From assembly GCF_037042905.1 (NCBI RefSeq), contig NC_087247.1:4653196-4714000 (forward strand): a stretch of 60,805 bases of DNA, read 5' to 3'. A program made the translations under genes and the position numbers. A model generated the notes under the pieces. It saw only the letters and a program-made list of their open reading frames with translations, was not told the DNA's origin and ran no database searches. Shown here one piece after another: positions 43,387 through 50,285 of the stretch (within the stretch, counting starts at the first letter, position 1; each line of letters starts with the position of its first letter). The DNA is from Lytechinus pictus (lineage: Eukaryota).

Positions 43387-44020
43387 ATGAAGCTTAACAA
43401 CCAAATTATTCCCAGAGTTGAAAATACTAAGTTTCTTGGCGTTATCATTGATAGTAATTTAACATGGATACATCACATAAATGAAATTGAGAACAAAGTT
43501 GCAAAAAATATTGGAATAATACATCACTTAAGTTTTTACTTGCCTAAAACTGTATTGCGTACATTGTATTGCTCTTTAATCTTGCCATATTTTTATTACT
43601 GTAATTTGGTCTGGGCTAACACATATCAAACCCATCTTAAATAATTATGTTCCCTTCAAAATAAAATTGTACGTATTATTTCTCCAGACGACAAGATACC
43701 ACTAGCAATTATCACAAATTTGTTTCATTCCCTAAAATTGTTGAAATTAGAAGACATCAACAAACTTCAACAATGTCATTTTCTCTACAGGTGTTTAAAT
43801 TCTCAAATTCCACAAAAAATTCGTGATTCATTTACATAAGTTTCCAACATATATCATTTTGATACCCGCTCAAATAATCAAATATTCATTCCCAAACATA
43901 GAAAAATAATCTTCCAACACAACATTCGTTATACTGGCCCCAAAATATGGAACGAAATTCCGGATTACATAAAAAATCTCTATCGACAACCAGCTTTAAG
44001 TATTTAAAAAAATGCTTCTG
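43387..44020 (+). mobile_element. 5'-truncated, degenerate CR1/L2-type LINE (ORF2 C-terminal region)
   Basis: KFLGVIIDSNLTWIHHI...LYCSLILPYFYYCNLVWANT, in-frame stop, then LQNKIVRII and later YTGPKIWNEIP-like sequence. Confidence 0.85.
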
Positions 44021-45793: not shown

Positions 45794-48700
45794 TTATGAC
45801 GTCAAATTTGATGTCGCGTTGCTGCACAAATTATGAGATTTTTCAGGCCCCAGATCGATTAGAAGAGTGAAGTAAGTCAACACGAAACCAGCAATCTGAA
45901 AAATAAATAGATTAATAAATGAATAGAAAATAAATAAATGAACAAATAAATAAATAATTTAATAAACATATAAATAAATGAATAAATAATTATATGAATA
46001 AATAGATTTTAAAAAAATAAATAAATAAATGAATAAATAAATAAGACTCAGGAACTATAGGGATGATGAACGATTAATTTTGGAAAGAATTTGATAATTA
46101 GGGTAAGCAATGGGTTTTATGATGAAATTTCGTAAGGCGTGTAACTCAAGTCAATAAGTTCAGCGGGTATATAGCAAATGCATGTAATATGCATGGTTCA
46201 TAATAGCTCCATCACTTTAATTGTTTACTGTAATTGGTCAAGTAATTTATTCAGGAGCGGATCCAGCTTTTACCAGAAAGGGGATGAGAGGCGGTTGATT
46301 TCATCCCCCCATAAAAAGGTAAAAATTCACAACCACTCTGAAAAATTGTAGACGTGCCCCTTTGTCCCCTCATTGATAAGGGCCATATACATATAATTTA
46401 ATTTTTAAAAATTACCTTCTTCCAGGCAGTGGCGAATCCGTGCCCGCCTCCAGTTGAGAGCCATGATAAAACAATTTAATGTAATTATGCCGTTTTTACA
46501 CAAGTGTGCCCCCCCCCCTTTGAAAGTGCATGAGGACCTTTTTTTTGCTTGTCAAATTTTCATCTGGAAAATGTGCCCCATCTTTTTGAAAATCCTGGAT
46601 CCGCCTCTGCTTCCAGGGGTCCGTTTCATAAAACTATTTATAATAACAAATTTGCAATAACATTTAAAAGCTACCGAAATCCTTTAATCTAATAATTGGC
46701 AGATGGTAAATTTGTTATAGAAATTGTACATATAACAAGTCTTTATGAAACGGAACCCAGATCTTACCGTTAGAATGACATTCCTGGTGACAGTGAAGAA
46801 TCCAATGAATGAAAGCCCAATGTTTGGACCATTTAGGCGGGAAACCAGTAGCAGGTGAATCTGTTGATAAAGCAGGAATTATGAGGTACTTTAAGATTAT
46901 ATAAATGGAGATGGGATTTGGAACCAAGACTTTTTGATAGGCGTACGTAGTTTATAATCTTTTATTTTCTCCCCCCCTCCTTTCATTGTCTTGAAAAACC
47001 ATAGAGGATAGTCGCCCACCGGTCGCATTGCCCTGTCTCTTAACAATAAGAACAAGATCAAAATGATATATTGGAATATTGAAGCAATTAACAGATTTGA
47101 GACCTACTACCCGAAAAAAATCAATGTGGGGAAAATTTCAGTTCTTTCAAATAAAAAAGTTCGATAGAGTATATCTATAGTGGCAGGCAGAGTAAATGGA
47201 TAGTGACAGATAGTAATACACTTCACTTTATTATTTTTTATTACTTTTAATGACGTCATAGTCATGGTCTTGAGTAATTCTAGCTGTAGTCCCTAAATTT
47301 AACCCGTTCCTCCTACCCCCTTTGTGCAATTTAAATTAAGTGTCAACTTAGTCTTTGCCTGAATTATCTTTATAGGGTCAACACCCCCTTTTTAGATTAT
47401 GGATCCTGTTAACATTTTAAACCCATTATTTCATTCTCCATGAGACAAATCATACCATAAGACAATGATTACATAGTATTGCAATATCTCCGAGTCAATA
47501 AACGATATCACAAAATAAGAATGCCATTTTTTTCTTTTTCTCTCAATATTTTATTTTAGACCCCAAAATCTTTTTTTTTTCATCTGATAAATAAATGCAC
47601 AATATTGGAAATTACATGAGATATTCTGGTGTCACTTGCATCCACGTGAAGTTCATAGACATGTCGCCGCAATGAATGTGCCTGGTAAAAGAAAAAATGT
47701 CACTCATTAATTGTTATAAAGCCAAATTTGGTACTTTAAATATTTTCTTTCATATAAACCCCACTGATTTGAAAACCTATTTGATATTTATTTGTTTGTT
47801 TTATTTCATTCATGTATTTGTTTTTTGGGAGAGGGTGGGGGATATACAGAAATTATTTCATTATTATTTCCGTGGGGGAGGCTTACTTCAATGATGGGGA
47901 CAAGGGCTGTATTTGATTGGTCTTCAATTTAGCAGAGATTCTAACTAATTTCAGATCATCTAACACTGTCATTGCTAAGCAGTGGCGTACCTAGGATTTT
48001 CCACAGGGGGGGGGGGGGCAAAACCGTCCGCCAAAAAATTTGACAAGCAAAAAAAAAAAGGTCTTCAATCACAAATAAAGGATTTCGTAACAGAAAAAAA
48101 ATTGACAAGCAAAAGAAGAAAAAAAAAGTCTTCAAACTCGTCAGGGGGGCAATAAAGGTCTTCAAGCTCGTCAGGGGGGGGGGGGGGGAGCAAAAAAGGT
48201 CTTTCAAGCTCGTCAGGGGGGGGGGGCAGGGATACGCTGCTTTGCATGGGTTGTGGCTCGTCAGGGGGGGGGGGGGGGCAGACTGCCCCCCTGCCCCCCC
48301 CCCCGTAGGTACGCGCTTGTGTTGCTAAGGGCTAAACAAGCAATTTGGTCTAATTCTGTTTAGGTCCAACCGTTATTTGGTCTAATTACCGTTGGCTTAA
48401 CATAATCTAATGCCCAGGAGGTCTAGCTTTCACTTCGTCATCTTATTATTTTGCACTTGGTAAATCTAATGTATGTGGTTCATATCATGTAATGATATAT
48501 ATATATATATTATGTTGTGTTAGTGTAAGTGTAGGCCTATTAGACGAAATGGATGTAGCCTAACTGGAAGTTAGACAAGGTGGTTAGTTGATGATCTCGT
48601 TGTAGATAATCGAGGATTAGACCATGTGGGATTAGACCAAATTGAAAGTACACAATGTGGGTGCAGACCAAGTGGCAATTTAACTGAGATGATAATCAAT

Positions 48701-50285
48701 TTCTGAAGATATTTCAACCGATTTGTCAGGAATGTTCATCTCAGTGGCAGTGGAATGGTTTTGAAAGCGGGGCTTGAGCCAAAAGTGGGGGCGGGGACTG
48801 ACCATGCAAAAAATCACTATTAGATGGTCATTTTTACGTTTTAATTGTACATGGTTTTAGAAAAAAGTGGAGGAAGCCCCCCAGCCTATCTTCTGTTTCT
48901 GTGCCCCCTGCATCTTGTTTAAATAAATGACTGAGAGAATGCATCAAAAGAATGCCTCTTACATCATTAGTTTTTTTGTGCAAATGAAAATGACCATGAT
49001 AGTGTCAATTACAATTGCAACATTCAGTGTAGGATTGCCTAAATTTCATCGTGTCGGTATGGTGGCCCGGTATTGTGGAAGGGATGGGAAAAGGGGAAAG
49101 CGAAAGAAAGAGAGAGAGAGAGAGAGGGGGGGGGGGGGGGGGGGGCTCGAGTCCACTAAGGATACTAAAAAAAATCAGGACTCCTACCTTCTCATTAAGC
49201 ATTGAACAGCACCAGGAGATGAGCAAAATATTCAGCATATTTGAGACACCCCAGTAGGCATTCAAGGCAGTAGTAAAAGTGCTTGAACTGTCGCTGTTGA
49301 AATAAATATCATACATGAGAAAGATGAGCAGGGGGATGTCAGTGGCAAAGACAATGGCGACAAGTGTAGAGAAAATGTAGTCGCACTGTGATGTGAGAAG
49401 ACACAAAATGTTATGCTGTCGACGGGTCTCTTCCAGGACATCAGCCCTTGCGCAGGTACCTAGGGGGTTCTCCTCCTTGAAGGCTTTGGTGAGCGAGTCA
49501 AATCTCTCCGAAAGAACATAGCAAATGAGGCAAAGGTAGACAACAGGGAACTTGTGGCATGCCAAGGCAAAGAATGAAATGACTTGCAGGAAAGCACAGG
49601 GAATATCACTTGTCCAGGGCGAGCACATGATACGGATTTCTTCACCATGATAGCCGAAGGTGAAGTACATGGAGACGGGGTACGACCCAAGGATGAAAAA
49701 CCACCCTCCTAGTGCAGCCAGGATCCCAACCTTCTTGAACTTCTTCCGTTGCAACATGCACCTTGGCTTGGGAGACTGCGTGTCGACTGACCTGTGGTCG
49801 AAGTCCACCCGATGTCTTTCGGCGGAGGGGTTCTGCCAGTAGCTGAAGAAGCGCTGTATCTTGCAGGTTCTATAGCATGCCAGGAAGAGGACAGTGTTGG
49901 TTGTGGCATTTTGTACGTACCAGCACAAGTAAGATGCATTCTGTAGGTTTAAAGTTGGGGCAATGAAAACGAGAAAACGAACGAGATCAAACCACATGAC
50001 TAGGACAACGAAGGCATGATAGACGAAGCCGAGTCTGTTCAAGATGTTCCGGATGAAAGATTGATTCCTTTGTAGTGACTGCGCATCATCCTCTTGTTGA
50101 GCAGGATGAACTGCGACTCCAGATGGTGATCGTTCATGCCACAGACCCAACAGCTTCATACTGATAGTGACGGGTCTGCTCACCTCAGAGAACATGATGA
50201 TATCTCTATGAGAAGCCTTGCAAACATTTTCTTCTGATCCTTCAGCAGGCTGCTTAAGCCAAGTAGGTGATGAAGACATCTCCAT
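45794..50285 (-). CDS. Gustatory receptor-like (GRL) 7TM ion channel of the insect chemoreceptor superfamily, ~452 aa, 4 exons
   Basis: Exons 50285-49188, 47681-47616 (AHSLRRHVYELHVDASDTRISH), 46860-46768 (IHLLLVSRLNGPNIGLSFIGFFTVTRNVILT), 45895-45794 (IAGFVLTYFTLLIDLG...*). Three phase-0 GT-AG introns near the 3' end. Motifs MKLLGLW and RRQHNILC....DYIFS; multiple hydrophobic helices. Confidence 0.9.
45900..46045. repeat. (AAAT)n microsatellite in the last GRL intron
   Basis: Direct inspection. Confidence 0.85.
46616..46757. mobile_element. Harbinger-like palindromic MITE
   Basis: GGGGTCCGTTTCATAAA...TTTATGAAACGGAACCC with CAG flanks. Confidence 0.7.
47980..48319. mobile_element. CAGTGGCGTACCTA-type element with internal G-run tandem repeats
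   Basis: Inverted termini gcgtaccta/taggtacgc; internal repeats (gtcttcaag)ctcgtcaggggg x4. Confidence 0.65.

What the first reader, a model, noticed from the sequence alone, without database searches (positions are those of the whole stretch)
45851..45877. Pore-gate motif variant TYFTLLIDL (QF -> DL) in the GRL
Seen: the TM7b signature TYhhhhhQF reads T-Y-F-T-L-L-I-D-L. Known: in insect OR/GR tetramers this Gln and the adjacent hydrophobic residue line the extracellular gate. Inference: a ring of four aspartates at the gate could change cation/Ca2+ selectivity, proton sensitivity or basal opening, defining a functionally distinct channel subtype.
Basis: partly seen in the sequence, partly recalled or inferred. 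Interest (0 to 1): 0.7.

Follow-up and report, generated by a model that had tools for sequence, protein, structure and literature searches.

The report
Aspartate at sea-urchin taste-receptor-like gate
A sea-urchin relative of insect taste-receptor ion channels carries aspartate where the family's pore gate normally has glutamine; the change is real, conserved across urchin species and under purifying selection, but it is a modest variant of a motif already known to tolerate an acidic residue, and its effect on the channel is untested.

Summary
TYFTLLIDL is encoded on the minus strand at 45877..45851, in the last of four GT-AG, phase-0 exons of an intact 452-aa gustatory-receptor-like (GRL) gene. 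The gene matches Pfam 7tm_7 above its cut-off, and its model matches only insect GR/OR/Orco structures.

D433 aligns with the gate Gln of BmGr9 (Q443) and of Orco. L434 aligns with Orco's gate Leu, so only Q->D is unusual.

- The Asp, with codon GAT, is also present in L. variegatus and S. purpuratus.
- dN/dS is 0.13-0.29.
- A control-tested tetramer model puts 433/434 at the central inter-subunit contact.

Novelty is limited:
- The published GRL motif already allows Q/K/E at this position and F/L/M at the next.
- BmGr9 Q443E has been tested and enhances activity.
- Two genes on another contig of this genome carry Glu here, in an old starfish/hemichordate clade. The other eight large GRL exons splice to Gln-type ends.
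- Asp and Glu arose independently (AU test p = 2e-8).

Most likely the Asp forms an acidic ring in the open pore that favours opening and cation entry. No deuterostome GRL has yet been shown to be a channel. No RNA evidence was obtained. The scan also noted the whole gene separately (s1-317607), and my gene model agrees with it.

The parts
49188..50285 (-). Coding exon 1 (366 aa: N-terminus through helix S6, ending ...MLNEK|gt)
   Evidence: ATG-initiated ORF with a GT donor at 49187. Pfam 7tm_7 at 31.1 bits against a 26.6 cut-off. 96% identical to L. variegatus LOC121411727.
47616..47681 (-). Coding exon 2 (22 aa, AHSLRRHVYELHVDASDTRISH), phase 0 on both sides
   Evidence: tblastn of the L. 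variegatus and S. purpuratus orthologues, and ag|...|gt splice sites.
46768..46860 (-). Coding exon 3 (31 aa, S7a and the loop before S7b), phase 0 on both sides. It is skipped in S. purpuratus isoform X2.
   Evidence: tblastn and splice sites. Family-profile hit at G000:C3:4699960-4700058, which is window 46765-46863.
45794..45895 (-). Terminal coding exon (33 aa plus stop): pore helix S7b, then an 18-residue C-terminal tail with NAT and NLT sequons and one Cys
   Evidence: tttttcag|ATT acceptor and TAA stop. Identical S7b in L. variegatus.
45851..45877 (-). TM7b signature motif TYFTLLIDL (residues 426-434)
   Evidence: Aligned to the GR and Orco motifs. The AF2 helix spans 414-433.
45854..45856 (-). 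GAT codon for D433, the homologue of the gate Gln (BmGr9 Q443)
   Evidence: GAT is present in all three urchin species. Paralogues use CAG or CAA, so Q to D needs two nucleotide changes.
45851..45853 (-). CTG codon for L434, the homologue of the hydrophobic plug (BmGr9 F444, Orco's gate Leu)
   Evidence: literature.

Best explanation
The stretch encodes the extracellular end of the pore helix (S7b) of an intact, echinoid-specific gustatory-receptor-like (GRL) protein of the insect GR/OR seven-transmembrane ion-channel superfamily.

Shown:
- The gate glutamine of the family motif has been replaced by aspartate (D433). The other pore-lining positions are kept: T419, T426, L430 and L434 match BmGr9 T429, T436, I440 and F444.
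- The change is derived. The Asp clade is nested among Gln-bearing urchin, crinoid and hemichordate relatives.
- It needed two nucleotide substitutions.
- It has been held under purifying selection since before Lytechinus and Strongylocentrotus split.

Inferred by homology, not shown:
- The protein assembles as a tetramer, and L434 plugs the closed pore.
- On activation S7b twists so that the four D433 side chains face the pore mouth, forming an acidic ring in place of the usual polar one.
- By analogy with the BmGr9 Q443E mutant, the most likely consequence is a shift toward the open, wetted state (higher apparent sensitivity or basal activity), together with electrostatic concentration of cations at the entrance. 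Stronger divalent-cation or proton interaction is also possible.

I put about 0.9 on the structural and evolutionary part and about 0.4 on the specific functional consequence.
For: - Motif and gene model.
- Family membership: Pfam 7tm_7 above its cut-off. Family profile against DmGr64a at E = 2.6e-15, and also OR28, Orco, MhOR5, Gr43a and BmGr9.
- Fold: AF2 model with pLDDT 78.9 and pTM 0.80, S7b helix at 414-433. The top 24 Foldseek PDB hits are all insect GR/OR/Orco, with TM-score up to 0.73, followed by a sharp drop.
- Residue equivalence: D433 to the BmGr9 gate Gln, and TYFTLLIDL to Orco TYFMVLVQL.
- Conservation: identical motif in L. variegatus and TYFTLLVDL in S. purpuratus, with GAT in all three and synonymous changes in flanking codons.
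- Selection: dN/dS is 0.13-0.20 against L. variegatus and 0.22-0.29 against S. purpuratus at dS 0.63-0.78. It is 0.13 from exon 2 through the motif.
- Derived state: the Asp clade (100/100) is sister to the urchin Gln paralogues (98/93), then a crinoid, then a hemichordate. Paralogue Gln codons are CAG or CAA.
- Tetramer model of residues 225-452, four copies: ipSAE 0.70 against a best control of 0.00, runs agree in at least 92% of contacts, partner pLDDT 76. Confident inter-subunit contacts include 426, 427, 429, 430, 432, 433 and 434.
- Function of the homologous residues: in BmGr9, F444 plugs the pore and Q443 swings in. Q443A is inactive and Q443E is more active with higher apparent affinity. 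MhOR5 Q467A and Q467R are dead.
Against: - No deuterostome GRL has been shown to conduct ions or to form tetramers.
- The complex pass may come from the model's memory of solved insect tetramers. The tool's calibration used two copies, not four.
- The structural models used the L. variegatus orthologue, which differs at 17 of 452 residues but has an identical S7b, not the window's own spliced protein.
- The pairwise alignments to BmGr9 and Orco are weak by E-value on their own (0.26 and 1). The residue equivalence rests on the profile hit and the invariant T-Y register.
- Asp has a shorter side chain than Glu, so Q443E may not predict its behaviour.
- The protein could instead co-assemble with Gln- or Glu-type paralogues, giving fewer than four Asp in the ring.
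- No expression evidence was obtained.
- Only three camarodont urchin species could be sampled.
Confidence: 0.6

Rival explanations
1. Near-neutral motif variant. Position 8 of the TM7 motif simply tolerates several polar or charged residues (Q/K/E, and here D). The Asp is then a lineage marker of one urchin paralogue, kept because any polar residue works, with no meaningful change in channel behaviour.
For: The published GRL motif is (T/S)Yhhhhh(Q/K/E)(F/L/M) and is called 'diagnostic, but not definitive'. Glu occurs naturally in another ambulacrarian clade and in two genes of this genome. The last position also varies among relatives: F, L, T, I, S and Y.
Against: Among 27 family representatives with a readable TM7, 22 keep Gln. 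Q to D needs two nucleotide changes, yet GAT is invariant across dS of about 0.6-0.8. In BmGr9 the position is functionally sensitive: Q443A is dead and Q443E is gain-of-function. MhOR5 Q467A and Q467R are dead.
Confidence: 0.25
2. Heteromeric or non-channel role. The Asp-type GRL does not form a homotetrameric pore. It may be a subunit of mixed complexes with the Gln- or Glu-type urchin GRLs, or act in a non-conducting, developmental signalling role. In either case there is no 'ring of four aspartates'.
For: Most insect ORs work as heteromers with Orco, and their motifs are less conserved. Sea-urchin and Nematostella GRLs are reported to be expressed early in development, and a Nematostella GRL may act in body patterning (Saina et al. 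2015, as cited). The genome holds three GRL types that could co-assemble.
Against: The homotetramer model scores 0.70 against 0.00 for the controls, with S7a and S7b at the interface. All the pore-lining positions of homomeric BmGr9 are conserved, which is more typical of pore-forming subunits than of tuning subunits.
Confidence: 0.15

Closest known systems
Bombyx mori Gr9 / Drosophila Gr43a (homotetrameric fructose-gated GR channels; PDB 8vc1, 8uvt, 8jm9)
   Same: Same fold (Foldseek probability 1.0, TM-score up to 0.73). Same S7b register, with matching T, T-Y, mid-helix hydrophobic gate and terminal hydrophobic plug. There is a phase-0 intron just before the TM7 exon, a position reported as conserved in animal GRs and GRLs.
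   Different: The gate residue is Asp instead of Gln, and the plug is Leu instead of Phe. Sequence identity is 13-15%. The ligand is unknown. The urchin protein has an 18-residue C-terminal tail after the motif with glycosylation sequons.
BmGr9 Q443E engineered mutant (Gomes et al. 2024, PMC11062906)
   Same: An acidic side chain at the same gate position. It is reported to enhance activity and apparent agonist affinity, and is the only experimental proxy for the urchin Asp.
   Different: It is Glu, not Asp, so one methylene longer. It is artificial, in an insect background, and ion selectivity was not reported in the passages read.
Orco (PDB 6c70) and MhOR5 (PDB 7lic)
   Same: Orco's motif TYFMVLVQL ends in Q-L, so the urchin's terminal Leu is canonical. 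In MhOR5 the Gln also swings into the open pore.
   Different: Both keep Gln. Orco normally works with tuning ORs.
Ambulacrarian Glu-type GRLs (A. planci XP_022090696.1, P. flava, G. talaboti; two genes on contig C8 of this genome)
   Same: Deuterostome GRLs with a naturally acidic residue at the same position (TYYAIISEF, TYFALLAEF, TFYAIISEF). The two C8 genes have the same four-exon, phase-0 structure as the window's gene.
   Different: They have Glu, not Asp, and the plug is Phe. The C8 proteins end two residues after the motif. They form a separate, older clade (100/100), and a single acidic clade is rejected (p-AU 2e-8).
Urchin Gln-type GRL cluster (contig C5; L. variegatus LOC121415159)
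   Same: These are the closest paralogues (sister clade 98/93). Exon structure is the same and the motif is nearly identical (TYFTILLQF).
   Different: They keep the canonical Q-F, are 23-30% identical in the large exon, and are organised as many large exons with few shared 3' exon sets.

Membership tests
Insect-type GR/GRL seven-transmembrane ion channels (Pfam 7tm_7, PF08395) | Significant match to the family profile | tested here: met
   PF08395 at 31.1 bits against a curated cut-off of 26.6, covering profile positions 153-296 on exon 1. The orthologues carry precomputed PF08395 and PF06151 hits. The family profile hits DmGr64a at E = 2.6e-15.
Insect-type GR/GRL seven-transmembrane ion channels (Pfam 7tm_7, PF08395) | GR/OR fold: seven helices with long S4-S6 and a split S7a/S7b | tested here: met
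   AF2 model with pLDDT 78.9 and pTM 0.80. Helices at 227-272, 281-329, 336-376, 384-397 (S7a) and 414-433 (S7b). The top 24 PDB matches are all GR, OR or Orco.
Insect-type GR/GRL seven-transmembrane ion channels (Pfam 7tm_7, PF08395) | TM7 signature (T/S)Yhhhhh(Q/K/E)(F/L/M); the literature calls it diagnostic, not definitive | tested here: met
   T426, Y427, five mostly hydrophobic residues (F-T-L-L-I, with one Thr) and L434 fit. Position 8 is Asp, which is outside the listed Q/K/E set but conservative to Glu. That single departure is the finding itself.
Insect-type GR/GRL seven-transmembrane ion channels (Pfam 7tm_7, PF08395) | Conserved phase-0 introns near the 3' end, one of them immediately before the TM7 exon | tested here: met
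   Three phase-0 GT-AG introns; the last acceptor lies 7 codons before T426. The positions are the same in L. variegatus and S. purpuratus and in the C8 paralogues; the C5 paralogues share the exon-1 donor position and have homologous 3' exons. The literature describes this feature.
Insect-type GR/GRL seven-transmembrane ion channels (Pfam 7tm_7, PF08395) | Intracellular N-terminus and extracellular C-terminus | tested here: inconclusive
   No topology predictor was run. The post-motif tail carries N-x-S/T sequons in all three species (NAT and NLT; NVT in S. purpuratus). That fits an extracellular C-terminus but does not prove it.
Insect-type GR/GRL seven-transmembrane ion channels (Pfam 7tm_7, PF08395) | Tetramer with a central pore lined by S7b | tested here: inconclusive
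   Four copies of residues 225-452 score ipSAE 0.70 against a best control of 0.00, with at least 92% contact agreement and pLDDT 76. The interface includes S7a and S7b residues 426-434. The tool's counts: the mark was reached by 21 of 30 proteins solved as pairs of one chain and by 0 of 23 solved as single chains, and it warns that a pass may come from memory of solved relatives. This is a prediction, not a measurement.
Insect-type GR/GRL seven-transmembrane ion channels (Pfam 7tm_7, PF08395) | Ligand-gated cation conductance | not testable with these tools
   This needs heterologous expression and electrophysiology or imaging. The papers read here report no functional channel data for any deuterostome GRL.

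The most novel reading that the evidence does not exclude
Deuterostome GRLs have evolved an acidic pore gate twice: Glu in an Ambulacraria-wide clade and Asp in an echinoid clade. These acidic-gate receptors would form a physiologically distinct class, for example constitutively leaky, Ca2+-preferring or pH- and divalent-modulated channels suited to sea water or to developmental signalling. That would make the Asp an adaptive change and not merely a tolerated one.
Probability: 0.2. Interest if true: 0.6.

Novelty: new member of a known kind. Interest (0 to 1): 0.35.

Why it matters
Structures and mutagenesis of insect receptors show that the Gln-Phe pair at the end of S7b is the moving part of the gate. 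No GRL from a deuterostome has been characterised functionally.

The urchin genome offers a ready-made natural series at this one position: Gln in the C5 cluster, Glu in the C8 pair and Asp in this gene. The backgrounds are otherwise comparable, and the Asp and Glu states are each conserved over long times. That gives a concrete comparative way to ask how charge at the gate tunes opening and cation permeation in this superfamily.

The finding itself is one conservative residue change within a motif already known to vary, so it is a useful lead and not a surprise.

Tried and rejected
1. RNA evidence. The look-up of sequencing runs found no holder on record as RNA. Expression and splice junctions therefore rest on homology and splice signals only.

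2. The search for homologous proteins with the 24-row family alignment returned only 5 proteins, nothing new. The first search gave 3. Orthologue sampling is therefore limited to three camarodont urchins.

3. A weak tblastn hit, VLYYIVVLVEV, downstream of one C5 large exon looked like another acidic variant. I rejected it: it lies in tag-repeat low-complexity DNA with no acceptor.

4. A single origin of the acidic gate (Asp plus Glu as one clade) is rejected by the AU test: delta lnL 48.8, p = 2.2e-8. The group was named after the first tree had been seen.

6. I did not compute pore radii or side-chain geometry, because the model coordinates are not exposed to scripts.

Full report
**1. The observation**

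The reverse complement of window 45851-45877 reads T-Y-F-T-L-L-I-D-L. The plus strand gives an unrelated peptide with a stop. In frame, the minus strand reads ...cag|IAGFVLTYFTLLIDLGPEKSHNLCSNATSNLTS*. The Asp codon is GAT at 45856..45854 and the Leu codon is CTG at 45853..45851.

**2. The gene**

A 426-aa ORF lies upstream on the same strand at 50285..49005. It runs past a GT donor that follows ...MLNEK. tblastn of two annotated orthologues, together with the splice signals, gives a four-exon coding model:

| Exon | Window coordinates (minus strand) |
|---|---|
| 1 | 50285-49188 |
| 2 | 47681-47616 |
| 3 | 46860-46768 |
| 4 | 45895-45794 |

All introns are GT-AG and phase 0. The product is 452 aa and the Asp is residue 433.

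Exon 1 matches Pfam 7tm_7 (PF08395) at 31.1 bits against a curated cut-off of 26.6. Phase-0 introns near the 3' end, with one just before the TM7 exon, are a published hallmark of animal GR and GRL genes. This agrees with the scan's separate note on the whole gene (s1-317607).

**3. The fold and the residue equivalence**

I made a 24-sequence family alignment (A2) with the L. variegatus orthologue as first sequence. That orthologue is 96% identical to the window's protein and has an identical S7b.

- A profile of A2 hits solved DmGr64a at E = 2.6e-15. It also hits OR28, Orco, MhOR5, Gr43a and BmGr9. The profile's TYfvLlvqf aligns to Gr64a's TYELVLLQF.
- Pairwise, D433 falls on the Gln of BmGr9's TYLVILIQ, and TYFTLLIDL falls on Orco's TYFMVLVQL. 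These pairwise E-values are weak, but the register is fixed by the invariant T-Y.
- Read off the same alignment, T419, T426, L430 and L434 match BmGr9 T429, T436, I440 and F444. Those are the two hydroxyl rings, the second hydrophobic gate and the plug described for BmGr9.
- The AF2 model has pLDDT 78.9 and pTM 0.80. S7a is at 384-397 and S7b at 414-433, so D433 is the last helical residue.
- The best 24 Foldseek matches in the PDB are all insect GR, OR or Orco structures (probability 1.0, TM-score up to 0.73). After them the scores fall to noise.

**4. What is known about this position**

- In BmGr9, F444 plugs the closed pore. On fructose binding it swings out and Q443 swings in, making the mouth hydrophilic. 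MhOR5 Q467 behaves the same way, and Q467A and Q467R abolish responses.
- In BmGr9, Q443A and F444A inactivate the receptor. [quoted passage not shown]
- Benton et al. 2020, citing Robertson 2015, give the animal GRL motif as (T/S)Yhhhhh(Q/K/E)(F/L/M). They note that the terminal Leu of Orco is part of the gate and that mutating it alters ion selectivity.

But Leu at the last position is canonical, and an acidic residue (Glu) at position 8 is already part of the described motif. Only Asp is outside the listed set.

**5.

(a) Private to this assembly? No. L. variegatus LOC121411727 has the identical TYFTLLIDL. S. purpuratus LOC105439903 (UniProt A0A7M7HE86, named 'Gustatory receptor') has TYFTLLVDL. 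All three use GAT, while neighbouring codons carry synonymous differences.

(b) Relaxed selection? No.

| Comparison | dN/dS | dS |
|---|---|---|
| Window vs L. variegatus, whole gene | 0.13 (NG86), 0.20 (ML) | 0.09-0.13 |
| Window vs S. purpuratus, whole gene | 0.22-0.29 | 0.63-0.78 |
| Window vs S. purpuratus, exon 2 through the motif | 0.13 | 0.59 |

(c) Modelled away from the pore? No. Four copies of residues 225-452 (S4-S7) gave:
- ipSAE 0.70, the median of three runs, against 0.00 for the best of three controls;
- runs agreeing in at least 92% of their contacts, with partner pLDDT 76;
- confident inter-subunit contacts that include S7a and S7b residues 426, 427, 429, 430, 432, 433 and 434.

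The tool reports that the mark was reached by 21 of 30 proteins solved as pairs of one chain and by 0 of 23 solved as single chains. It warns that its calibration used two copies and that a pass may come from memory when like complexes are solved. I take this as consistent with a central position, not as proof.

**6. How unusual is the Asp?**

A family-profile search of 1.84 billion representatives found 1064 relatives at E <= 0.001. Many of the top 150 are models truncated at the first intron. Twenty-seven family proteins have a readable TM7 (24 of the top 150 plus three members of the same clusters, P0001, P0153 and P0155):

| Residue at motif position 8 | Count | Which |
|---|---|---|
| Gln | 22 | most lineages |
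| Glu | 3 | Acanthaster planci, Ptychodera flava, Glandiceps talaboti |
| Asp | 2 | the L. variegatus and S. purpuratus orthologues of this gene |

The window's own genome holds 11 GRL large exons:
- This gene, on C3, has Asp.
- Eight large exons in a 105-kb cluster on C5 are served by only three detectable sets of 3' exons. All three read TYFTILLQF, with Gln as CAG or CAA.
- Two near-identical genes on C8 have clean terminal exons reading IGGLLLTFYAIISEFNA*, so Glu occupies the position.

**7. Phylogeny**

On an IQ-TREE (LG+C20) tree of 26 full-length proteins:
- The Asp clade (window, L. variegatus, S. purpuratus; 100/100) is sister to the urchin Gln-type paralogue (98/93), then a crinoid Gln protein, then a hemichordate Gln protein.
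- The C8 gene groups with the A. planci Glu protein (100/98), inside a Glu clade with the two hemichordates (100/100).
- Forcing all acidic sequences into one clade costs 48.8 log-likelihood units (p-AU 2.2e-8), and at least two changes of state are needed. I named that group after seeing the first tree.

So Q to D is a derived, echinoid-lineage change, independent of the older Q to E. Going from CAR to GAT needs two nucleotide substitutions, through Glu or His.

**8. Interpretation**

Shown:
- An intact, constrained GRL gene.
- The Asp at the structural position of the gate Gln.
- Conservation across three urchins. By my own knowledge, not tested here, Lytechinus and Strongylocentrotus split roughly 50 million years ago.
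- Independent recurrence of an acidic residue at this site in Ambulacraria.

Inferred:
- Tetramer assembly.
- Rotation of D433 into the open pore.
- An effect on gating and cation handling.

The best experimental proxy, BmGr9 Q443E, points to a bias toward the active state. An effect on divalent or proton sensitivity is plausible from general channel biophysics but has no direct support here. The tail just beyond the helix (G-P-E/D-...) adds a second conserved acidic position, E436 in Lytechinus and Asp in S. purpuratus. That would add to the negative charge at the mouth.

The rivals are a near-neutral tolerated variant, and a heteromeric or non-conducting role.

**9. Verdict**

All three refutation tests failed to refute it. 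It is nevertheless a one-residue, conservative departure from a motif already known to accept Glu, in a family already described in sea urchins, with no functional data. I class it as a new member of a known kind, of modest interest. Its main value is as one arm of a natural Gln/Glu/Asp series for testing gate electrostatics.

**10. Limits**

- No RNA evidence was obtained.
- The structural models used the L. variegatus orthologue.
- Orthologues could be sampled in only three species.
From 96% protein identity and dS of about 0.1 to L. variegatus, it is a close Lytechinus relative (inference).

Noticed in passing
G000:C5:7886499-7994857 (loci L002-L009, L012-L025): Eight GRL large first exons sit in a 105-kb minus-strand cluster, but only three detectable sets of the small 3' exons (homologues of exons 2-4) are present, all ending TYFTILLQF. 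This suggests alternative large 5' exons spliced to shared 3' exons, as I recall for Drosophila Gr28b and Gr39a. The L. variegatus counterpart is annotated with isoforms (LOC121415159 isoform X2).
   Followed up: partly
G000:C8:29386161-29390338 (+) and G000:C8:37357338-37362249 (-): Two near-identical Glu-type GRL genes (terminal exon IGGLLLTFYAIISEFNA*) lie in opposite orientation about 8 Mb apart on one contig. They are either a recent inverted segmental duplication or an assembly duplicate. They are the urchin members of a clade shared with starfish and hemichordates.
   Followed up: partly
window 46768-46860 (exon 3); P0002 vs P0155: S. purpuratus isoform X2 (415 aa) skips the 31-residue exon 3, which encodes S7a and the loop before S7b. 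It joins exon 2 directly to the pore-helix exon in frame. Such a product would lack part of the anchor domain and may be non-functional or regulatory.
   Followed up: no
window 49005-49187: The exon 1 reading frame stays open for 61 codons past the GT donor, through a poly-C and CT-repeat tract. Intron-blind ORF callers therefore produce read-through, TM7-less models. Many database relatives, such as P0003 and P0005, are truncated in this way, which hides the motif in most entries.
   Followed up: partly
window 45794-45850 (C-terminal tail after the motif): The 18-residue tail after D-L has a Gly-Pro helix break, an acidic residue at 436 (Glu in Lytechinus, Asp in S. purpuratus), a Ser-His pair, one Cys and N-x-S/T sequons, all kept across the three urchins. 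The C8 Glu-type paralogues end two residues after the motif.
   Followed up: no
window 49600-49640 region of exon 1 (residues about 220-232, MCSPWTSDIPC): A C-x-P-W-x-S-x(3)-C motif in the loop before S4 is nearly invariant across all urchin paralogues (family consensus CxPWxSxxxCGF). It may be an extracellular disulfide specific to this deuterostome GRL group.
   Followed up: no
window 43387-43644 (+): An 85-aa ORF downstream of the GRL (…KFLGVIIDSNLTWIHHINEIENKVAKNIGII…) looks to me like the C-terminal part of a non-LTR retrotransposon reverse transcriptase. It is probably a repeat fragment.
   Followed up: no
   Followed up: no
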